A DNA stretch of 64,000 bases, from contig NC_043005.1 of the NCBI RefSeq assembly GCF_006345805.1, positions 24,862,001 through 24,926,000 of the forward strand, given 5' to 3'. Within the stretch, counting starts at the first letter, position 1. Every line of letters starts with the position of its first letter. Shown here piece after piece: positions 3,339 to 52,181 of this stretch. Both the position numbers and the translations under genes were made by a program. Source of the stretch: Octopus sinensis. Its lineage: Eukaryota. The notes beneath the pieces were generated by a model. It had not been told where the DNA came from. It ran no database searches and worked only from the letters and a program-made list of their open reading frames with translations.

Positions 3339-4424
3339 CGCGACCTCTAGACGACTTCTGAATCTCCTGCAACTCTTCTACACAGCCTCTTTGTTTAAGT
3401 TGCTGAACGTTGCCATAATCCTTGCTTTCTGTTTATCTTTGGTGTTACAAGGAGTTATAATAATCAAGGGGTTTGCAGTCTGGGATGTTAGGTGGCCAGA
3501 TGTTAGAGGTGGTTTGGTCGCAGAAATTGTTTGACAGCCATGACTGGGTTCTCCTACTTGTGTGACATGGTGCAGAGTCCTGTTGCCAGACATAGGGTGT
3601 TCCAGTAGCCACCCTCTTGACCCAGGTCAGCACTACCTCTTTCAGGCACTTGATGTAGGCCCCCGTGTTGAGTCTGAGGCTGTGTGGGAAGACGAATGGA
3701 GGCTTAACGTCGCCATCACTAGTGATTACTCCAAACACCATGATGTTGACTAGATGTTTGATTTTTATCACTCTCAGTACATGTTTTGGGGACACGCCAA
3801 GCCAACGGTTGTTCACCATCTGATCCTGGTAGAAATTTTTCTCGTCTGAGAAAAACTAAAGCATGTTCGATTGGAAGGTGTGCTTGAGTTTCTTCAAAAG
3901 CATCGTAGCGCGGTCTTTCCTCTTGTCCTTGATGGTTTGGGATAAAAATTGGCCCTTTCTCATCTTTTATGAGGAATATCGAATGTCTTCATGCGCTAAC
4001 TCCCATATCCCTAGCGATGGACCTGATTGACTTTGAAGTATCGTTGTCAATCATGGCCTGGATCTCACCAACCAATTCCGGAGTATTTTTCTTATCAGAA
4101 CGATAAGAGTGAGTTTTCAGAGCTGCCCTACCTTCTTAATTAACATTTTTCTCATCCAACTCCTTCCGAATCCTCTGCACTGTCCTCAGATTGCCACCTA
4201 CACACTGAAATGTTCGTATTGGAGCTTCCGGTGCGACTTCCAAGCAGTACAGCATGTCATTTCCCAATTTCTGTCAGAGTGAATTGCGTCATGGTGCTGG
4301 TTTTCTCACAGACAGTGCCCAACTGATCCTACTATACTGTGTTGTCGACAAAATATAAAAAACAAAACAAACATGTACGAAATTAAAAATATAAAGTGTC
4401 GACAATTTACCATCGCATCCTGCA
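3339..4424 (-). mobile_element. Tc1/mariner transposon remnant of the DD37D (maT/mori) type, 3'-truncated
   Basis: FFSDEKNF (first D) lies just upstream of ORF 3445-3819, which contains QQDSAPCHTS...WPPNIPDCKPLDY with 37 residues between the second and third D. One TIR-like end at ~4400-4424 abuts a (TA)n tract. Confidence 0.85.
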
Positions 4425-7015: not shown

Positions 7016-7279
7016 CAAAAATATTATTTTTGTGAATTGGTCAAGCGTGTTAAATTCCTTTCCCTCCTCCTATTAACTTAAAAGTTGTTTTGATGAACAA
7101 CTTTAAAACAAGATCACACAAGAACCTCTTGTAAAGTAATAAAAAGACATTTAAATAACTGAAATTCTTGGCATATTTCTCTCCCGCCTCCTTCATCACC
7201 GTTCCCCGAAGGTGACAATTAGACAAGATCTCAACTGAAGGCTGCTTCTGTTGTCTATGATTAGCTTTGCATTTGTTGG

Positions 7280-8235
7280 TAATAGTTGTAGTGGTGGTGG
7301 CAATGGTGGTGGTGGTGGTGGTGGTAGTAGTAGTGGTAGTATCAACCAACGATGGTGGTTGTGGTTGTGGCAGTGGTAGAGATAGTGGTGATGATGATGA
7401 TGTAGGTGCTGGCGTAGTAGTGGTAGTATCAACCAACGATGGTGGTTGTGGCAGTGGTGGAGATAGTGGTGATGATGATGTAGGTGCTGGCGTTAGTGTA
7501 GTGGTAGTGACCAAAATGCAGTAGTAATAGTGGCAGTTGTGGTGGTGGTAATGGTGGTGGTGGCAGTCGTAACGGTCATCGTTGTAGTTTGACGGTGGTG
7601 GCGATGGTGGTAGCAAAAGTGGTGACAGCAGCGACAAGAATAGTAGTAATAGTAGTGGTGGTGATGGTGATCGTGGTGTCGGTTGTGGTGGTAGGAGTGG
7701 TAGTGGTGATTGTAGTGATGGTTGTAGTGGATATAGTAGTATCGGTAATTGTCGGTGGTAGTAGTGGGAGTAGTGCTGGCTGTAGTGGAAGTATTGCTGG
7801 TTGTGGCGGTAATAGTGCTGGTTGTGGTGGTAGTGGTGCTGGTTGTGGCGGGAATAGTGCTGGTTGTGGTGGTAGTGGTGCTGGTTGTGGCGGGAATAGT
7901 GCTGGTTGTGGCGGTAGTGGTGCTGGTTGTGGCGGTAGTGGTGCTGGTAGTAGGGGTAGTGGTGCTGGTTGTGGCGGTAGTGGTTCTGGTAGTAGTGGTA
8001 GTGGTGCTGGTTGTGGCGGTAGTGGTGCTGGTAGTAGTGGTAGTGGTGCTGTTTGTGGTGGTAGTGGTGCTGGTTGTGGCGGTAGTAGTGCTGGTTGTGG
8101 CGGTAGTAGTACTGTAGTAGTGGTAGTAGTGCTGGTTGTGGCGGTAGTAGTACTGTAGTAGTGGTAGTAGTGGTAGTAGTGCTGGTTGTGGTGGCGGTAG
8201 TAGGTGTTGAGTGAGATGTAGTGTAACAGTAGTGA
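7280..8235. repeat. (GGT/GTA)-rich low-complexity region with an ~80-bp duplication (7325-7500) and a 21-bp minisatellite (~7771-8200)
   Basis: The unit GGTAGTGGTGCTGGTTGTGGC is repeated roughly 18-20 times. TATCAACCAACGATGGTGGTTGTGG occurs twice. Confidence 0.9.
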
Positions 8236-8304
8236 TGGTGATATAAACAAAACTAATAATATTTTACTTTTGGTGTTGTAGCGACAAAATTGTTTCACTA
8301 TGAC

Positions 8305-14228: not shown

Positions 14229-14577
14229 GTGGAAGCGCAATGGCCCAGTGGTTATGGCAGAGGGCTCGCGGTTTCGATTCCCTGACCGTACATTGTGAGT
14301 GTTTATTGAGCGAAAACGCCTAAAAGCTTCACGGGGCTCCGGCAGGTGGCGAACCTTGCTGTACTCTTTCACCACAACTTTCTCTCGCTCATTCTTCCTG
14401 TTTCTGTTGTACCTGTATTTCAAAGGGTCAGCCTTGTCACGCTCTGTGTCACGCTGAATCTCCCTGAGAACTACGTTAAGGGTACATGTGTCTGTGGAGT
14501 GCTTAGTCACTTACACGTTAATTTCACGTGCAGGCTGTTCCGTTAATCAACTGGAAGTCTCGTAACCGACGGAGTGC
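14229..14577 (+). mobile_element. SINE family C (tRNA-Arg-like head)
   Basis: Head GCGCAATGGCCCAGTGGTT...GGTTTCGATTCC; body closely similar to 16469-16853 and 50379-50760. Confidence 0.85.
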
Positions 14578-16468: not shown

Positions 16469-16853
16469 GTGGAGGCGCAATGGCCCAGTGGTTAGGGCAG
16501 CGGACTCGCGGTCATAGGATTGCGGTTTCGATTCCCAGACCGGGCGTTGTGAGTGTTTATTGAGCGAAAACACCTAAAGGTTCCACGAGGCTCCGGCAGG
16601 GGATGGTGGTGATCCCTACTGTACTCTTTCACCACAACTTTCTCTCACTCTTACTTCCAGTTTCTGTTGTACCTATATTTCAAAGGGCCGGCCTTGTCAC
16701 TCTCTGTGTCACGCTGAATATCCCCGAGAACTACGTTAAGGGTACACGTGTCTGTGGAGTGCTCAGCCACTTACACGTTAATTTCACGAGCAGGCTGTTC
16801 CGTTGATTCGGATCAACCGGAACCCTCGTCGTCGTAACCGACGGAGTGCTTCC
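16469..16853 (+). mobile_element. SINE family C, full length, probable TSD
   Basis: A/B-box head. Flanked by ATTTAAACCTGA (16457-16468) and ATTTAACCCTGA (16858-16869), one mismatch. Confidence 0.88.
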
Positions 16854-18589: not shown

Positions 18590-18663
<74 letters not shown>

Positions 18664-18818
18664 GACAGGCTTCTTTCAGTTTCCGTCTGCCAAATCCACT
18701 CACAAGGCTTTGGTCGGCCCGAGGCTATAGTAGAAGACACTTGCCCAAGGTGCCACGCAGTGGGACTGAACCCGGAACCATGTGGTTGGTAAGCAAGCTA
18801 CTTACCACACAGCCACTC
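18385..18818 (-). mobile_element. SINE family A copy
   Basis: Full consensus with intact CpGs and a central (CA)n(TA)n tract. Confidence 0.88.
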
Positions 18819-19730
18819 TTTCGCCGATATATATGTATATAGTTGAAAAAATTTGTCATAGGTATAAAAATACTATATGGTATTTTTATACCGATAACGA
18901 AGTTTTTCAATTGTTATTTTCATATTCTTAATACTTGCTCTGGCTGATTTTTATGAATATGATAAATTTTTATTGGAAATTATTTTCTCTCTCTTTTTGG
19001 ATCCTTCAAAAAGTTTGAATTGTTCTTTTTGAACTTATTTTCTCTCTAGAAAAGAAATGTAAGAGTCACAGAAAGTTTGTATGATAAAATTTGTGGTGAT
19101 ATTAGGATCATATTTACATCATTACAAATGAAATAATTACCGGTTTCAGGATCAACGATTCTCAACTTGTATAGAGAAAACTTTTTTTGCTGTCAGTAGG
19201 ACGCCATCTTTGAAAAAGAAGTAAACAGAGATGAAGTAATATGTCAAGGGGAGCAACTCTTATTTTTTCACGAAGATCTTCAGTGCTTTTGGCAAGCATA
19301 CCATTATAGGAGTTATTTCATTTTATACACAGTTAATTTATATTAAAAATAAAATAATAATAATAATAATAATGAAATTATTGTATACAGTGCTCAGGTG
19401 CACCACAACTTGTCAGAAAGTGCATATAAAGTACATGCAGTAATGTAGAAATGTCTGGAAAGCTAACAATGTATGAGTCAGATACATGCTTGTGTGTGTA
19501 TGGAGGGGAGAAAATCAAGTGTAGTGTTGGCGAATCTCAGGAAGCATGGAAGTTTTGAAGGATGCAGTGCACCGTACTAGGTTTTAAAGATTAAGGAGTA
19601 ATGTGTGAATGATTGTATATGGATATATTTTATGCTCTAACATCTAATTTTATCTCCATACACACACACACACACACACATGAAGTATGAACAGTAATTT
19701 ATACCTAAAAACTGTGGTTGGCAAACTCCC

Positions 19731-20150
19731 TTTACTCTTTTACTTGTTTCAGTCATTTGACTGCGGCCATGCTGGAGCACCGCCTTTAGTCGAGCAAATC
19801 GACCCCGGGACTTATTCTTTCTTTGTAAGCCCAGTACTTATTTTATCGGTCTCTTTTGCCGAACCGCTAAGTGACGGGGACGTAAACACACCAGCATCGG
19901 TTGTCAAGCAATGCTAGGGGGACAAACACAGACATACAAACATATACACACACACTTATATATATATATATATATATACATATATACGACAGGCTTCTTT
20001 CAGTTTCCGTCTACCAAATCCACTCACAAGGCATTGGTCGGCCCGGGGCTATAGCAGAAGACACTTGCCCAAGATACCACGCAGTGGGACTGAACCCGGA
20101 ACCATGTGGTTGGTTAGCAAGCTACTTACCACACAGCCACTCCTGCGCCT
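19731..20150 (-). mobile_element. SINE family A copy
   Basis: Full consensus, near-identical to 31751-32178. Confidence 0.88.
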
Positions 20151-20384
20151 ATATATATATAACTTTTATGTATTTGTTGAAATTCCATAATTGAATAAAA
20201 TAAATCAGTCCAATAGAAAATGAAAATGAACGATAAAGCAATTGCCAAGGTATGAATACTTATGACTCTATAAGAGTCATGTCGGACCTCTCATGACTCA
20301 GGTTTGAATATGTATGGGTGTCCAGGAGTCAAGTAATTAAATGACAATTAGTAATACAATTAAAATTAAAACACACACACACAA

Positions 20385-25871: not shown

Positions 25872-26108
25872 CTTTTATTCGTTTATTTGTTTCGGTCATT
25901 TGACTGCGGCCATGTTGGAGCATCGCCTTTAGTCGAGCAAATCGACCCCAGCACTTATTCTTTGTAAGCCTAATACTTATTCTATCGGGCCCTCTTGCCG
26001 AACCGCTAGGTTACGGGGACGTAAACACACCAGCATTGGTTGTCAAGCGATGTTGGAGCGACAAACACAGACACACAAACATATGCATACATACATACAT
26101 ACATACAC

Positions 26109-26150
<42 letters not shown>

Positions 26151-26301
26151 TCGACGGGCTTCTTTCAGTTTCCGTCTACCAAATCCACTCACAAGGCTTT
26201 GGTCGGCCCGAGGCTATAGTTGAAGACACTTGCCCAAGGTGCTACGCAGTAGGACTGAACCCGGAAGCATGTGGTTCGTAAGCAACCTACTTACCACACA
26301 G
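25872..26301 (-). mobile_element. SINE family A copy
   Basis: Full consensus with central microsatellite. Confidence 0.85.
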
Positions 26302-27679
26302 GAGATCACTTCATTAATAATGTTATTACTTATGTCACATGCAGTGTATGTATTGCTTAATTTTACGTGATATGGAATAAACAACGTTCGTTTACAGAAA
26401 CAATCGTAACATCGATTTGACTCCTATTTTCCTCAATTACACACACACACACACACACTCTCTCTCTCTCTCTTGCTACATTCAAGTTTATTTCTTGTAT
26501 TTTTCTCATCTGCTCTGACAGCCTAAAGAAAGTATCTCATTTCTCCGCATTTCATTCGTCAAAAAAATTCTTTTAAACTATCAGCAGAGATGTATAACAG
26601 GTTAGTTTGAAGTAACACTTTGATGGTGTTGTCGTTGTTATTGGTGAGTTTCGGTCGGTTGATTTTCATTAAAAAGAAAAAGAAAAGTGTCGTCATGCCT
26701 AATGCAACCGGGTTCATTTAGTAAACTCTGTCTTTATTTAATCAAATTGTTCAGTGGATTTCGAGGTAATTTTCAATACCAGTTTTGGTCTTATTTCTTT
26801 ATAGTTTTTTTTTCCTTTTCACACCAACTCTGAACTAAGTGGGAACAGAACAGTCAGTACAAGTCGGAAATAGTGTTTTATGTAACAGAATTTAACTACA
26901 AAGTAAGGCTTTTGTGTTTGTGGATAACCTCGTTGTATTTTATATTTTTAAAGTTTTTTTCTTTTCATATTTCATTCATGTTTTCCCCATTCTTTATCTT
27001 TCCATCTTCATTCTTTCTTGCCGTCTTTTTTTTCTTTCTTCTTCCCCCCCCCCACCTTTCATTTACCTGAATTTCACGTGTTACCAGGACAAGGTCTCAG
27101 GTTACTGGCGTCACAGTATTTCGTTATGGTAACCATACAAAGATATATTTATAATTTTCGCCAGTGACAAAAACCTACAAATGCGGGAATTAAATACTTA
27201 TTGAAATTTATTAAATACAGGAATAGGATCTTTATTATTTTATCTCCTTTTTATTTCGAAGATCCACAACTTCTGAACGGACACCCCAAAGCATATGGTG
27301 CCCCGAGTTGTCGGTATTTTCAACTAGCCTTACTTCGAAGACTTATGAGATCCCAGACGTCTCTACCCTTCTGTCAAGTTGCCCACTATTCTATCCAGTC
27401 GGCTGCCCATGTCTCTCTCGCTTCTGCTATTGACCTTCATGAGTAACAGCTAAATGTTTTCGCCTTCAAATGTCTACCCACAATTCTAAAAGTCTTTTCT
27501 ACTTCGTTTTTTTAGTTAAAACAAAGCCAACGGATCGACTATTTTAATATTACTTTTAGTGGTAGTTTGAAATATGAAAATATTAGGGGCCATTATGTTA
27601 TGTATATCCACCTTCCTCACCTTTGTGGTCATGTTTCACTGTAAGGTTTTCTAAAACTTCTACCAGATTGTAAGCCAGC

Positions 27680-31750: not shown

Positions 31751-31974
31751 TACTCTTTTACTTGTTTCAGTCATTTGACTGCGGCCATGCTGGAGCACCG
31801 CCTTTAGTCGACCAACTCGACCCCGGGACTTATTCTTTCTTTGTAAGCCCAGTACTTATTCTATCGGTCTCTTTTGCCGTACCGCTAAGTGACGGGGACG
31901 TAAACACACCAGCATCGGTTGTCAAGCAATGCTAGGGGTCAAACACAGACACAAACACATACACACACACACAC

Positions 31975-32023
<49 letters not shown>

Positions 32024-32178
32024 TACGATAGGCTTCTTTCAGTTTCCGTCTACCAAATCCACTCACAAGGCATTGGTCGGCCCGGGGTTATAGCAGAAGA
32101 CACTTGCCCAAGATGCCACGCAGTGGGACTGAACCCGGAACCATGTGGTTGGTTAGCAAGCTACTTACCACACAGCCA
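31751..32178 (-). mobile_element. SINE family A copy (left arm of an inverted pair)
   Basis: Full consensus. Confidence 0.9.
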
Positions 32179-32245
32179 AATTATTTTTTTTCATTTTAAC
32201 CTATTTTCAATCACTTGTAAAAATTTAAAAGTGATATTCAGAAAT

Positions 32246-33728: not shown

Positions 33729-34130
33729 TCTTTACTCTTTTACTTGTTTCAGTCATTTGACTGCGGCCATGCTGGAGCACCGCCTTTAATCGAGCAACTC
33801 GACCCCGGGACTTATTCTTTTGTAAGCCCAGTACTTATCCTATCGGTCACTTTTGCCGAACCGCTAAGTAACGGAGACATAAACACACCAGCATCGGTTG
33901 TCAAGCAATGCTAGGGGGACAAACACAGACACACACACGCATATATATATATATATATACATATATACGACGGGCTTCTTTCAGTTTCCATTTACCAAAT
34001 CCACTCACAAGGCTTTGGTCGGCCCGTGGCTATAGTAGAAGACACTTGCCCAAGGTGCCACGCAGTGGGACTGAACCCGGAACCATGTGGCTGGTAAACA
34101 AGCTACTTACCACACAGCCACTCCGGCACC
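33729..34130 (-). mobile_element. SINE family A copy
   Basis: Full consensus; last CpG-intact family A copy before the CpG-depleted domain. Confidence 0.88.
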
Positions 34131-34810
34131 TATATATTTTCTTTCTTCCTTTCTTTTCTTTTATTTCCCCCCTCCTCTCTTTCTCACATGCTAAATTTTT
34201 ACTTAAAATTAAATCTGTGAACTTCTTAGACATGTCCCAAACTGCTGTTCCAGTGCTTTTTTCAGTTTCACAATCATATACGATAATGTTGGCGGTGCAC
34301 TTTATTATGCTTCGGCAGTTTTTAGAAGGCAACACCAGTTTTCCCTGATGCGATGTTTATAAATTCAGGATTTGTAGCAGCTTCAGTCTTCGTTATTATA
34401 ATGATATAATTATAAATGTTACCTTTTTTTTTCGTCTTAAATTCGGAAAAGTAATCAGAAAATGGAGACCCCCCCGCCAAAAAAAAAGTTAATTTCCAAT
34501 TTAAAATTTATTTTATTTTTCTTCCATTCAGATATCCAACATGACAAGAATCTTTCAAGACAAGATTTCACCAAACTTAAAAAAGTAGGTCCTTTGTTAT
34601 TATTTTTTTGGGGGTTATAGTTTTTCAATTTTTTTTTTTTTAGTTTTAATTTTAACTGTAACTAATCAACATTAACTAAAATCAATACCAATCACAATCT
34701 AATAATATTGATTTTTTAACACTGGTATAAAGCCATCACACATTTCATTCTTTACCTTCTTTTTAGGCCCCAGAAAGTTAGAATTATTTCTCACTGAAGT
34801 GTGTGTGCGT

Positions 34811-49125: not shown

Positions 49126-49353
49126 TATGGCATAGTGGTTAAGAGTGTGGGCTACTAACTCCAAGATTCCAAGTTCGATTTCAAGCAGTGACCTGAATAA
49201 TAATAATAATAATAATAATAACATTGTATAGGAATGAGAACCCAGGTTTGAAATTTTCCCAAGACACCTGATGAAGGCTGGAGGGTATATCAGCCAAAAT
49301 GTTGTGTTAACAACAAACAAGATGAGGACAAATATCCATCAAATGTAAATAAT
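49126..49353 (+). mobile_element. SINE family E (tRNA-like head, (AAT)n spacer, hammerhead-like module), copy 1
   Basis: Head GGGCATAGTGGTTAAG...GTTCGATTTC; ACAC-CTGATGA-A-GGCTG(N10)CAGCC-AAAA-TGTT-GTGT at 49264-49307. Confidence 0.75.
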
Positions 49354-50002
49354 GGTCAGAATGTAACAACAAACAAAACAGTGCTAAGCATATTGGCAGG
49401 TGTGCTAACGATTCATCAAGCTTGCCACCTTGATGATGATGATAATAATAATAATAATAATCATAATCATAATGATTACCCGATGTGTCAACGATTCTGC
49501 CAGCTTGCCGCTTTGATAAAATAATAATAATAATAATATTATTAGTAATAATAGTAATAGTGCAAAAAGGAGTCTGAACAATGAAAAGCTGACATTAGGA
49601 TGATGATGATGATGATGATGATGATTAAGGTCAGCTGTTCTGTGGCTATCATTATGTCTTTGAAAATCTGTGAGAAGAAGAATATTTATGGATAACTGTT
49701 TTGAAGCCCGCACCTTCACTATTTTGATTATAAATTCACACTTCTTCAAATTTAATGATTTATTTATTATAAAATCACACAATAATTGCTTATGTAGATC
49801 GTTATGTTATTAGATATTTAAATGACCATGTGCAAAAGCTAGAACTTTTAGGCAAAGAAAGTGACCAACAAATGACACTTTTCTTATACAGTCTGTAAAT
49901 GGAACTGTAAGAATAAAAAAGATTTCCCTAAAGTTCAAGATGTAACACTTTCACAATGTAACACTTTCAAGATGTAACACTTTCTGTTTTTGTTGTCTAA
50001 AT

Positions 50003-50200
50003 ATCCTTTTCTACTCGAGGCACAAGGCCCAAAATATTTATGGGGTGGGGCCAGTCGATTAGATCGACTCCAGTATGCAACTGGTACTTAAATTATCAAC
50101 CCTGAAAGCATGAAAGACAAAGTTGACCTCAGCAGAATTTGAACAGAAATGCTAAGCATTTCACCTGGTGTGCTAACGTTTCTGCCAGCTCGCCGCCTTT
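50003..50200 (-). mobile_element. SINE family B copy
   Basis: Consensus with a small deletion, CpG-eroded. Confidence 0.75.
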
Positions 50201-50378: not shown

Positions 50379-50760
50379 GGAAGCACTCCGTTGGTTATGA
50401 CGACGAGGGTTCCGGTTGATCCGATCAACGGAACAGCCTGCTCGTGAAATTAACATGTAAGTGGCTGAGCACGCCACAGACATGTGTACCCTTAACGTAG
50501 TTCTCGGGGATATTCAGCGTGACACAGAGAGTGACAAGGCCGGCCCTTTGGAATACAGGTACAACAGAAACAGGAAGTAAGAGTGAGAGAAGGTTGTGGT
50601 GAGAGAGTACAGCAGGGATCACCACCATCCCTACCGGAGCCTCGTGGAGCTTTAGGTGTTTTCACTCAATAAACACTCACAACGCCCAGTCTGGGAATCG
50701 AAACCGCGATCCTACGACCGCGAGTCCGCTGCCCTAACCACTGGGCCATTGCGCCTCCAC
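50379..50760 (-). mobile_element. SINE family C, full length, 11-bp TSD
   Basis: TATACACACTT at 50368-50378 and 50761-50771. Confidence 0.92.
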
Positions 50761-51852: not shown

Positions 51853-52181
51853 TCTCTTAAATATAGAACTGCTCACGAGCATATGCCGTGGTGGTTAATG
51901 TGCGGGCTACTAACCCCAAGAGTCCGAGTTTGATTCCAGGCAGTGCCCTGAATAATAATGACGACGACGACGGGGACGGTGATGGTGGTGACGGCTTCGG
52001 CGGCGAGGACGACGACGTTGACGACTTTAGGAATGAGAACCCAGGTTCGAAATTTCCCCAAGACACCTGATGAAGGCCAGCGGGTATATCAGTCGAAACG
52101 TGTTAACAACAAGCAAGATGAGGACGAATATCTGTGAAATGTAAATAATGTAAATAATTCCTCATCTCTTAAATATAGAAC
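51853..52181 (+). mobile_element. SINE family E, copy 2, bounded by a 17-bp direct repeat
   Basis: TCTCTTAAATATAGAAC at 51853-51869 and 52165-52181; tRNA-like head; (GAC/GGT)n spacer; CTGATGA (52067-52073) ... GAAA (52095-52098). Confidence 0.78.

What the first reader, a model, noticed from the sequence alone, without database searches (positions are those of the whole stretch)
51853..52181. tRNA-headed SINE carrying a built-in minimal hammerhead ribozyme (retrozyme-like element)
Seen: two copies (49126-49353 and this one) share a Pol III-type head (A box CATAGTGGTTAAG, B box GTTCGATTCC-like), a variable trinucleotide spacer, and a conserved 3' module containing CTGATGA-A-GGCTG(loop)CAGCC. 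Copy 1 keeps stem I (ACAC/GTGT) and the GTT cleavage site but has G12>A. Copy 2 keeps GAAAC but has lost 3 nt. Merging them gives ACAC-CUGAUGA-A-GGCUG..CAGCC-GAAA-CGUU-GUGU, a complete type I minimal hammerhead with a palindromic stem III (AACGUU). Known: minimal, dimer-dependent hammerheads occur in Penelope-like elements, animal non-LTR retrozymes and schistosome SM-alpha repeats. Inferred: this is a Pol III-transcribed, self-cleaving SINE probably mobilised by a Penelope-type RT. The 17-bp terminal direct repeat is either a TSD or a multimer junction. Both local copies look inactive.
Basis: partly seen in the sequence, partly recalled or inferred. Interest (0 to 1): 0.8.

Follow-up and report, generated by a model that had tools for sequence, protein, structure and literature searches.

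The report
Octopus SINE carrying a decayed minimal hammerhead
Two worn-out copies of an octopus short interspersed repeat carry the remains of a tiny self-cutting RNA motif (a minimal hammerhead of the kind found in Penelope-like retrotransposons); the consensus of related copies holds the motif intact, but cutting has not been tested.

Summary
The window holds two copies, 49126-49355 and 51853-52181, both on the + strand. Each has a degenerate tRNA-like head with Pol III A and B boxes, a variable trinucleotide spacer and a conserved 3' module of about 135 nt.

I recovered ten more DNA copies from another cephalopod and about 88 clusters of translated relatives. The majority consensus of 11 copies reads CAC-CUGAUGA-A-GGCUGG(8 nt)UCAGCC-GAAA-CG-U-U-GUG. 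That is a complete minimal type I hammerhead with three hallmarks published for Penelope-like-element hammerheads:
- an unpaired base after A9
- a G10.1-C11.1 pair
- a palindromic 15.2/16.2 pair with no helix III

- Copy 1 differs from it in the motif only by two CpG-decay transitions (G12>A and C15.2>U).
- Copy 2 has lost 3 nt.

Simulated windows never matched the descriptor. Against the claim, the copies show no covariation, Rfam hammerhead models do not score them, and every genomic copy examined has at least one departure from the intact motif. Cleavage, Pol III transcription and mobilisation by a Penelope-type RT remain inferences.

The 17-nt terminal repeat is conserved element sequence, not an ordinary target-site duplication. 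The closest precedent is the schistosome Sm-alpha/Sj-alpha hammerhead SINEs, so this is a new variant of a known kind.

The parts
49126..49195 (+). Copy 1, tRNA-related head. A box TGGCATAGTGG 49128-49138; B box-like AGTTCGATTTC 49172-49182.
   Evidence: Sequence. Aligns with the heads of copy 2, L013, L007 and L019. ARAGORN calls it only at an 80% threshold. No Rfam tRNA hit.
49196..49222 (+). Copy 1, (AAT)n internal microsatellite spacer.
   Evidence: Sequence. An (AAT)-rich spacer sits at the same place in L007, L013 and L019, and at the contig starts of L011, L015 and L022.
49228..49355 (+). Copy 1, conserved 3' module. It is 3'-truncated or interrupted: the terminal 17-mer is absent.
   Evidence: Alignments A1 and A7. 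Covariance model R1 scores 92.3 bits at 49255-49324.
49263..49308 (+). Copy 1, decayed minimal hammerhead. Helix I 49263-67 with 49304-08; core CUGAUGA 49268-74; unpaired A 49275; helix II 49276-81 with 49290-95; G12>A at 49296; C15.2>U at 49300; U16.1 49302; U17 49303. The predicted ancestral cleavage site lies between 49303 and 49304.
   Evidence: Only hit of the CpG-tolerant descriptor in the window; 0 in 2000 simulations. Copy 2 has CG at both decayed positions. A TTTT run at 49256-49259 is private to this copy.
51853..51869 (+). Copy 2, upstream copy of the 17-mer TCTCTTAAATATAGAAC.
   Evidence: Identical to 52165-52181. No remnant of an older copy lies upstream of it.
51870..51879 (+). 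Copy 2, 10-nt junction TGCTCACGAG between the 17-mer and the head. It is not conserved in other copies.
   Evidence: Head alignment A8.
51880..51950 (+). Copy 2, tRNA-related head. A box-like TGCCGTGGTGG 51884-51894; B box-like AGTTTGATTCC 51927-51937.
   Evidence: Sequence; alignment A8.
51951..52026 (+). Copy 2, trinucleotide spacer: (AAT)3 followed by GAC/GGT-rich triplets.
   Evidence: Sequence; alignment A1.
52027..52164 (+). Copy 2, conserved 3' module with an (AATGTAAAT)2-like tail.
   Evidence: Alignments A1 and A7. R1 scores 73.2 bits at 52054-52120.
52062..52104 (+). Copy 2, broken minimal hammerhead. GACAC 52062-66; CUGAUGA 52067-73; A 52074; helix II strands GGCCAG 52075-80 and TCAGTC 52089-94 (three substitutions; three of six pairs, including a G-U, remain); GAAA 52095-98; CG 52099-52100. 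A 3-nt deletion removes the U16.1/U17/G1.1 register.
   Evidence: Fails both the strict and the tolerant descriptor.
52165..52181 (+). Copy 2, 3'-terminal 17-mer. This is conserved element sequence.
   Evidence: The same 3' end occurs in L013 (TCTCATAAATATAGAAC) and L022 (TCTCACAAATATAGAAC). It also appears as ..SSSLKYRT.. or a variant in P0009, P0024, P0027, P0032 and P0035.

Best explanation
These are two old, inactive copies of a cephalopod SINE-like retroposon family.

A full element is about 290-330 nt and has these parts in order:
- a degenerate tRNA-related head with internal Pol III A and B boxes
- a variable trinucleotide microsatellite
- a conserved 3' module of about 135 nt
- an (AATGTAAAT)n-like tail
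- the terminal sequence TCTCWYAAATATAGAAC

On the same strand as the head, the module's family consensus encodes a complete minimal type I hammerhead of the Penelope-like-element type: CUGA(U/C)GA, one unpaired A, a 6-bp helix II opening with G10.1-C11.1, GAAA, a palindromic C15.2-G16.2 with no helix III loop, U16.1, U17, and a short open helix I.

Shown: the anatomy, the consensus motif, and the lesions in both local copies.

Inferred:
- Pol III transcribes source copies from the head through the module.
- The hammerhead cannot fold a helix III alone. It would cut after GUU only when two units pair through the palindrome ACGU, either in trans or in multimeric or read-through RNA.
- The module is pLTR-like sequence that lets a Penelope-type reverse transcriptase copy the RNA.
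- Template jumping or a longer-than-unit template explains the 17-nt terminal redundancy of copy 2 and the head-to-head inverted pairs seen elsewhere.
For: 1. The majority consensus of 11 DNA copies, built by MAFFT without reference to any motif, passes a strict minimal-hammerhead descriptor. L007 passes it with a single CpG decay.
2. L019 182-251(-) was neither used for the model nor selected through an ORF. It scores 53 bits and reads CUGACGA..GAAACGUUGUGAU.
3. Copy 1 differs from the consensus motif by two CpG transitions, and copy 2 still has CG at both sites.
4. The descriptor found 0 sites in 2000 simulated windows, and 0 in 600 with the looser version.
5. The unpaired base after A9, G10.1-C11.1, the palindromic 15.2/16.2 and a short helix I are the features listed for PLE minimal hammerheads (PMC4209133).
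6. Among the 88 translated relatives, group A has ORFs starting at the module's ATG. Group B has tandem units of about 43 aa (about 129 nt).
7. In group B, TPEEG fits a CUGAAGA core, which varies only at the free position 7. After PK come RC 22, CC 12 and HC 9 of 52, that is CGY-UGY with its CpG-decay derivatives.
8. The group B consensus back-translates to helix II GGCCGG/CCGGCC, against GGCUGG/UCAGCC in group A. That is one C-G to U-A exchange between family consensuses.
9. The consensus monomer folds with helices I and II at -13.0 kcal/mol, against an MFE of -14.2.
10. The A box matches TRGCNNAGTGG exactly in copy 1, and the B box starts 44 nt downstream.
11. The family occurs in O. bimaculoides (P0009, P0013) and in a second cephalopod that shares other window repeats at about 80-84% identity.
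Against: - There is no covariation among the 11 copies. 75% of cells pair against 74.5% in shuffles, and the covariation score is 0.140 against 0.135. RNAalifold predicts neither helix.
- Rfam hammerhead models give no hit at E<=10 in the window copies or in 9 other loci.
- None of the 12 genomic copies passes the strict descriptor. Eleven carry clear lesions; L007 differs only by C15.2>U and a 3-bp helix I.
- Published PLE minimal hammerheads cleave poorly in vitro even as dimers (PMC4209133).
- Helix I is only 3 bp in the non-octopus consensus.
- The descriptor's CpG tolerance was added after seeing the data.
- Most extra copies were retrieved through ORFs similar to the query, which biases them towards query-like sequence.
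- No PLE, pLTR or RT could be examined. Pfam found no RT or EN domain in ten ORFs that extend beyond the module.
- The short tandem tail resembles LINE-type SINE tails.
- The group B evidence is at the protein level only, so third codon positions (U4, G12, A15.1, U16.1) are unseen.
Confidence: 0.7

Rival explanations
1. Chance resemblance. The module is a conserved SINE body or tail kept for recognition by a reverse transcriptase, and it happens to contain CUGAUGA...GAAAC around a hairpin. No ribozyme was ever encoded.
For: No covariation. RNAalifold finds nothing. No Rfam hammerhead hit. No copy passes the strict descriptor. The motif was found by a reader looking for such things.
Against: The descriptor never occurred in 2000 or 600 simulated windows. 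All PLE-type hallmarks are present at once (PMC4209133). Three lineages (octopus, the Logan species and group B) keep the core, and the CUGANGA box differs between their consensuses only at the free position 7. The R/C/H then C pattern in 43 of 52 group B units fixes GAAA-CG-U-U-G.
Confidence: 0.15
2. A real hammerhead, but only a passenger. The SINE is mobilised by a conventional LINE through its (AATGTAAAT)n-type tail. The hammerhead module was captured from a Penelope or retrozyme fragment and plays no part in the SINE's own life cycle.
For: Short tandem 3' tails are typical of LINE-dependent SINEs. SINE bodies are often mosaics of unrelated pieces (PMC5786205, PMC4758252). The window copies are dispersed singletons, not tandems. 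A cut after GUU would separate the Pol III head from the 3' tail.
Against: The conserved 3'-terminal 17-mer also precedes copy 2. Its homologue (SSQKFRQ) sits at the unit junction of the group B tandem arrays. Head-to-head inverted pairs occur in L007 and L019. Partial tandems and inverted 5'-truncated copies are described for PLE insertions (PMC8557442). No LINE tail match could be tested.
Confidence: 0.25
3. Not a SINE. The two loci are fragments of Penelope-like-element pLTRs, or of a tandem retrozyme array, that happen to lie next to tRNA-like sequence.
For: Most minimal hammerheads in animal genomes are solitary and were attributed to truncated PLEs (PMC4209133). The tRNA-likeness of the head is weak.
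Against: The same head-spacer-module order recurs in copy 1, copy 2, L007, L013 and both copies in L019, in at least two species. The homologous region starts a few nt before the A box in all of them. There are no tandem units in the window.
Confidence: 0.05

Closest known systems
Sm-alpha / Sj-alpha SINE-like retroposons of Schistosoma (Ferbeyre et al. 1998; Laha et al. 2000; as summarised in PMC2770079 and PMC6765202)
   Same: Both have a tRNA-derived head with a Pol III promoter, followed on the same strand by a type I hammerhead. Both are high-copy retroposons. In both, the ribozyme is thought to process multimeric transcripts.
   Different: Sm-alpha carries a canonical, efficient hammerhead with helix III and loop-loop contacts that Rfam recognises, and it is often tandem. 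Here the motif is the loop-less, dimer-dependent minimal form, the window copies are dispersed singletons, a microsatellite separates head and module, and Rfam does not score it. Sequence homology to Sm-alpha was not tested.
Minimal hammerheads (min-HHR) of Penelope-like elements (Cervera & de la Pena 2014, PMC4209133)
   Same: Same core. Both have an unpaired nucleotide between A9 and G10.1, a G10.1-C11.1 pair, a relatively long helix II (6 bp here), a short open helix I, a palindromic 15.2/16.2 and no helix III. Both occur widely as solitary, heterogeneous genomic copies.
   Different: Those motifs lie in the pLTRs of RT/GIY-YIG elements or in fragments of them. Here the motif lies behind a Pol III-type head, and no PLE could be linked to it.
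Animal non-LTR retrozymes (Cervera & de la Pena 2020, PMC7229834; Li, Clavereau & Pollet 2026, bioRxiv 10.64898/2026.07.22.740005)
   Same: Both are small non-autonomous elements with type I hammerheads, and retrozymes are proposed to depend on PLEs. The sister group B of this module forms tandem units (about 43 aa, about 129 nt, up to three units per ORF).
   Different: Retrozymes are tandem repeats of 170-400 nt without a tRNA head, and they are expressed as circRNAs. The window copies are single and headed. No RNA data were available.
Ceph-SINEs and CORE-SINEs of cephalopods (Akasaki et al. 2010; Ohshima & Okada 1994; PMC5786205)
   Same: They are tRNA-derived SINEs of cephalopods with conserved bodies.
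   Different: The diagnostic 23-nt RTE-like stretch of the Ceph domain is absent from the window (0 matches at up to 3 mismatches). No hammerhead is described for those families.

Membership tests
Hammerhead ribozyme, PLE-type minimal form (min-HHR) | Core C3-U4-G5-A6-N7-G8-A9 | tested here: met
   CTGATGA in both window copies. CTGA(T/C)GA in 8 of 11 aligned copies and in the consensus. TPEEG of group B fits CUGAAGA.
Hammerhead ribozyme, PLE-type minimal form (min-HHR) | G12-A13-A14-A15.1 | tested here: met
   GAAA in the consensus and in 7 of 12 copies, including copy 2. Copy 1 has AAAA, a CpG decay after C11.1.
Hammerhead ribozyme, PLE-type minimal form (min-HHR) | Cleavage triplet N16.2-U16.1-H17 | tested here: met
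   GUU in the consensus. Copy 1 reads UGUU after decay. Copy 2 lost it through a 3-nt deletion.
Hammerhead ribozyme, PLE-type minimal form (min-HHR) | Unpaired nucleotide between A9 and G10.1, and a G10.1-C11.1 pair opening helix II | tested here: met
   An A is present in 10 of 11 aligned copies. G-C is present in 8 of 10 informative copies (pair 49/68). Helix II is 6 bp in copy 1 and in the consensus.
Hammerhead ribozyme, PLE-type minimal form (min-HHR) | Palindromic 15.2/16.2 with no helix III loop (dimer-dependent) | tested here: met
   CG in the consensus, L013, L011, L019 (both copies), L021 and copy 2. TG or CA decay forms in copy 1, L007, L012 and L014.
Hammerhead ribozyme, PLE-type minimal form (min-HHR) | Helix I of about 4-5 bp | tested here: inconclusive
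   5 bp (GACAC/GUGUU) in copy 1. Only 3 contiguous bp (CAC/GUG) in the 11-copy consensus.
Hammerhead ribozyme, PLE-type minimal form (min-HHR) | Compensatory changes in helices across family members | tested here: not met
   No excess over shuffles among the 11 copies. There are single cases only: L007 pair 3 C-G to G-C, and group A U-A against group B C-G at pair 4, the latter inferred from peptides.
Hammerhead ribozyme, PLE-type minimal form (min-HHR) | Location in the pLTR of an element encoding RT and GIY-YIG endonuclease | not testable with these tools
   No octopus PLE sequence could be fetched. No RT or EN domain was found in ORFs that extend beyond the module.
Hammerhead ribozyme, PLE-type minimal form (min-HHR) | Site-specific self-cleavage (as a dimer) | not testable with these tools
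   This needs an experiment.
Rfam hammerhead families (Hammerhead_1 RF00163 and relatives) | Covariance-model score at or above the gathering threshold | tested here: not met
   No hammerhead hit at the gathering threshold or at E<=10. This includes the copies with intact cores (L013, L007).
tRNA-derived SINE | Internal Pol III A and B boxes at tRNA-like spacing | tested here: met
   Copy 1 has TGGCATAGTGG (an exact TRGCNNAGTGG), and its B box AGTTCGATTTC starts 44 nt downstream. The boxes are conserved across five heads.
tRNA-derived SINE | Recognisable tRNA cloverleaf in the head | tested here: inconclusive
   ARAGORN finds nothing at default or -ps settings. At an 80% threshold it calls a weak tRNA-like fold (anticodon ACT) in the consensus, copy 1 and L013. 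No Rfam tRNA hit.
tRNA-derived SINE | Dispersed copies flanked by target-site duplications | tested here: inconclusive
   The copies are dispersed: 2 in the window, 10 in other contigs, and proteins from O. bimaculoides. The only clear flanking repeat, the 17-mer of copy 2, is conserved element sequence.
tRNA-derived SINE | 3' tail shared with an autonomous partner (LINE or PLE) | not testable with these tools
   No octopus LINE or PLE library was available.
Sm-alpha / Sj-alpha | Canonical type I hammerhead with helix III and loop-loop contacts; tandem organisation | tested here: not met
   No helix III loop is present, and helix I is open and short. There are no tandem copies in the window.
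Animal non-LTR retrozymes | Head-to-tail tandem units of 170-400 nt, each with a hammerhead | tested here: not met
   The window copies are single, 2.5 kb apart, and carry a Pol III head. Only the sister group B shows tandem units, of about 129 nt and at the protein level.
Ceph-SINE | Ceph domain (CORE-like part plus RTE 5'UTR part, including CCTCCAGCTATGGGTTAAATAGT) | tested here: not met
   0 matches at up to 3 mismatches in the window. The sequence comes from PMC5786205.

The most novel reading that the evidence does not exclude
This family would be the first Pol III-headed SINE that Penelope-like elements mobilise in trans. Its conserved module would be a pLTR-derived 'hammerhead domain' shared with tandem retrozyme-like repeats in other animals (group B). 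SINEs, non-LTR retrozymes and solitary minimal hammerheads would then form one continuum of PLE-dependent non-autonomous elements, with the dimer-only ribozyme acting as a switch between multimeric and unit-length RNA.
Probability: 0.35. Interest if true: 0.75.

Novelty: new variant of a known kind. Interest (0 to 1): 0.55.

Why it matters
Penelope-like elements are abundant in invertebrates, but their non-autonomous partners are only now being defined. A 2026 preprint argues that vertebrate retrozymes are PLE derivatives.

A cephalopod SINE with a Pol III head and a PLE-type minimal hammerhead would add three things:
- It would give a second, independent example, after schistosome Sm-alpha, of a SINE with a built-in ribozyme.
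- It would tie SINE biology to PLE biology.
- It would offer a compact, testable substrate of about 300 nt for asking what the weak, dimer-dependent hammerheads do.

It also matters for annotation. Rfam models miss this class. One copy is read as a coding exon in an O. bimaculoides gene model.

Tried and rejected
- Exact-pattern scans for the module found only 4 chance bacterial hits in genome contigs and nothing in metagenome contigs or viral contigs.
- A protein search with the minus-frame SINE ORF gave 0 hits.
- Sampling octopus DNA through a mariner-like ORF yielded L005 (O. bimaculoides) and L006 (ENA contig), 41 kb in total with no copy.
- The gene range of P0013 was too long to fetch.
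- Group B DNA was not found in metagenome or viral contigs. Cluster look-ups gave no organism names.
- The run accessions SRR118693xx appear in no held paper.
- Lunse et al. 2017 and Ferbeyre et al. 1998 are not held.
- I considered copy 2 having inserted into the tail of an older copy. The upstream 150 nt do not resemble the module, so I rejected this.
- I considered the module being protein-coding. The frame is broken in copy 1 (TGA) and ends at a stop codon inside the module in copy 2, and the peptide 'conservation' tracks CpG decay, so I rejected this.
- I considered membership of the Ceph domain and rejected it.

Full report
**What is in the window**

The window is octopus-type genomic DNA, about 38-40% G+C, dense in microsatellites and several SINE families. 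Three results place it in or near Octopus bimaculoides.
- It shares repeat families at 86-90% identity with a locus of that species.
- Copy 1 translates to 23 residues identical to an O. bimaculoides protein model.
- Another O. bimaculoides protein, P0009, is a translated copy of the same family.

**Checking the observation**

blastn and a covariance model run without filters found exactly two in the 64 kb.

Copy 1 has these features:
- an exact Pol III A box, TGGCATAGTGG, at 49128-49138
- a B box-like AGTTCGATTTC at 49172-49182
- an (AAT)n spacer
- a 3' module containing GACAC-CTGATGA-A-GGCTGG-(8 nt)-TCAGCC-AAAA-TG-T-T-GTGTT at 49263-49308

Copy 2 has the same order of parts but differs in three ways:
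- It has a GAC/GGT-rich spacer.
- It has three substitutions in the stem.
- It keeps an intact CGAAACG but lacks 3 nt after it.

The 17-mer TCTCTTAAATATAGAAC flanks copy 2 on both sides, at 51853-51869 and 52165-52181.

ARAGORN and Rfam find no tRNA and no hammerhead here, even at E<=10.

**Getting relatives**

No eukaryotic genome collection can be searched by DNA with these tools. Pattern scans failed, and so did a first protein search with the minus-frame ORF.

Translating the module in the frame that reads ..TPDEG..PK.. and running a profile search over the 1.84-billion-protein library gave 88 cluster representatives at E<=1e-3. They fall into two groups.
- Group A has ORFs that begin at the ATG of GGAATGAGAAC. 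It includes the O. bimaculoides entries P0009 and P0013.
- Group B comes from long ENA contigs of unknown host. It has tandem units of about 43 aa (about 129 nt), up to three per ORF, sometimes preceded by the same module read on the opposite strand.

Nine distinct Logan contigs encoding group A ORFs were fetched. They come from one sequencing project.

A covariance model built from ten copies found one further copy, L019 182-251(-). That copy had been neither used for training nor selected through an ORF.

**The family consensus**

The MAFFT majority consensus of 11 copies reads:

..CCA-GACAC-CTGATGA-A-GGCTGG-AGAGTACA-TCAGCC-GAAA-CG-T-T-GTGAT-AACAACAAACAAGATGAGGAC..

It passes a strict minimal-hammerhead descriptor: CUGANGA, an optional bulge, a helix II of at least 4 bp opening with G-C, GAAA, complementary 15.2/16.2, U, H, and a helix I of at least 3 bp.

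- Eight of the ten further DNA copies carry the 3 nt that copy 2 lacks, so copy 2 has a deletion.
- Copy 1's two departures from the motif (G12>A, C15.2>U) are CA and TG at positions where copy 2 and the consensus have CG, which is ordinary CpG decay.
- In group B, the two residues after PK are RC in 22 units, CC in 12 and HC in 9 of 52. That is the codon pair CGY-UGY with its two CpG-decay products, which fixes GAAA-CG-U-U-G at the family level.
- TPEEG in group B corresponds to CUGAAGA, and the Logan copies have CUGACGA. Between the lineage consensuses the box therefore differs only at position 7, the one free position of the hammerhead core.

**Is it more than chance?**

A descriptor that also accepts the CpG-decayed forms hits copy 1 and nothing else in the window on either strand. 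It found no site in 2000 first-order Markov simulations of the window. A looser form (any N7, helix I of at least 3 bp) found none in 600. The CpG tolerance was added after seeing the data, but copy 2 independently shows CG at both positions.

**Fit to the known class**

Cervera and de la Pena (PMC4209133) list features that set Penelope-like-element minimal hammerheads apart:
- an unpaired nucleotide between A9 and G10.1
- a conserved G10.1-C11.1
- a long helix II and a short helix I of 4-5 bp
- palindromic 15.2/16.2 with little or no helix III, so that activity requires a dimer

All are present here. The extra A, which looks like a defect against the textbook motif, is one of these hallmarks.

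The consensus monomer can form helices I and II at -13.0 kcal/mol, close to its MFE of -14.2.

**Evidence against, stated plainly**

- Among the 11 copies there is no covariation beyond shuffled controls.
- RNAalifold predicts neither helix on the decayed copies.
- Rfam hammerhead models do not score any copy.
- No copy passes the strict descriptor. L007 is the nearest, with one CpG decay and a 3-bp helix I.

This pattern is what neutral decay of dead copies from an intact source would give, but it means the helices rest on the consensus and not on covariation.

Two isolated compensations exist. L007 has pair 3 changed from C-G to G-C. Pair 4 is U-A in group A and C-G in group B. The second is inferred from peptides and involves two CpG transitions.

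Retrieval through ORFs similar to the query biases the sample towards query-like sequence. It cannot, however, have produced G12, the CG or the extra 3 nt, each of which one or both query copies lack.

**The 17-mer**

The same 3' end occurs in L013 and L022. It also occurs, as ..SSSLKYRT.. and decayed variants, in five translated copies, including another O. bimaculoides copy. Its homologue ..SSQKFRQ.. lies at the unit junction of the group B tandem arrays.

It is therefore element sequence, not a duplicated random target. The alternative is an extremely sequence-specific target site, which I could not exclude.

The 150 nt upstream of copy 2's 5' 17-mer show no remnant of an older copy. Copy 2 thus carries a terminal redundancy. 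Degenerate AAATAYR motifs also precede the 5' ends of copy 1 and L013.

L007 holds two copies head to head, and L019 holds an inverted pair about 430 nt apart. Partial tandems and adjacent inverted 5'-truncated copies are described for PLE insertions (PMC8557442). This is suggestive only.

**Mechanism**

Shown:
- the anatomy
- the consensus motif
- the lesions: copy 1 has G12>A, C15.2>U and a private TTTT run at 49256-59 that would stop Pol III before the motif; copy 2 has the 3-nt deletion, three helix II substitutions and decayed A and B boxes

Inferred:
- Pol III transcribes from the head.
- The ribozyme cuts after GUU only when two units pair through ACGU.
- A Penelope-type RT copies the RNA through the pLTR-like module.
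- Template jumps create the terminal redundancy.

No PLE could be examined, and ten ORFs that extend beyond the module show no RT or EN domain. I put the Penelope step at roughly even odds.

**Comparison and novelty**

The kind is known. Schistosome Sm-alpha and Sj-alpha are tRNA-derived, Pol III-transcribed SINE-like elements with a hammerhead (PMC2770079, PMC6765202). PLE minimal hammerheads are widespread as solitary copies (PMC4209133). Animal retrozymes are now argued to be PLE derivatives (bioRxiv 10.64898/2026.07.22.740005).

My searches found no description of the combination seen here: a Pol III head, a microsatellite and a loop-less PLE-type hammerhead, dispersed, in a cephalopod. 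The element is not a Ceph-SINE.

I rate it a new variant of a known kind, of moderate interest. The local copies themselves are relics.

Noticed in passing
window 49273-49341 (+): The hammerhead-bearing part of copy 1 translates to 23 residues identical to aa 10-32 of 'dystrobrevin beta isoform X1 [Octopus bimaculoides]' (P0013, 94 aa; gene range about 132 kb). The SINE copy seems to be annotated as an alternative coding exon, and the window probably lies inside that gene. An AG at 49275-76 could serve as acceptor. The residue after the match (K in P0013, N in the window) does not fit the GT donor at 49345.
   Followed up: partly
proteins P0012, P0015, P0017, P0030 and about 50 others (ENA contigs of 40-700 kb, host unknown): This sister family (group B) carries the same module as head-to-tail units of about 43 aa (about 129 nt), consensus QTPEEGRRTYRPKRCGNNNKDEDNSPKTLNDKNHQASSQKFRQ. 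Some units are preceded by an inverted copy. It looks like a short retrozyme-like tandem repeat with a minimal hammerhead. No DNA or organism could be obtained.
   Followed up: partly
L007 1-200; L019 100-950: L007 has two copies of the SINE head to head, with their 5' ends 6 nt apart. L019 has an inverted pair about 430 nt apart. The arrangement is reminiscent of the inverted 5'-truncated copies described next to PLE insertions.
   Followed up: partly
window 3445-3819 (-): A 124-aa ORF is a fragment of a mariner/Tc1-like transposase. It is 64% identical to an uncharacterised O. bimaculoides protein (P0003) and to ORFs on ENA contigs.
   Followed up: partly
window 50380-50760 (-), also 16600-16807 and 14345-14548: A different, much younger tRNA-derived SINE family is present, with a head ..GGCCCAGTGGTTAGGGCAGCGGACTCGCGGTCGTAGGATCGCGGTTTCGATTCCCAGAC.. 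Copies are up to 96% alike within the window.
   Followed up: no
window 49381-49520 and 50000-50200: Fragments of another repeat (..TGCTAAGCAT..GGTGTGCTAACG..TCTGCCAGCT.GCCGCC..) lie directly downstream of copy 1, interleaved with (GAT)n and (AAT)n runs. They probably cut off the 3' end of copy 1.
   Followed up: no
window 7050-8300: A minisatellite with 21-nt (9+12) periodicity gives long Thr/Pro/Ala- or Gly/Ser/Val-rich ORFs on both strands. It is probably not coding.
   Followed up: no
window 18598-18837, 19922-20161, 26087-26326, 31961-32200, 33903-34142 and inverted partners: At least seven copies of a further repeat family of about 240 nt are 84-90% alike, often next to (TA)n or (CA)n runs. 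The same family occurs in the O. bimaculoides locus L005.
   Followed up: no
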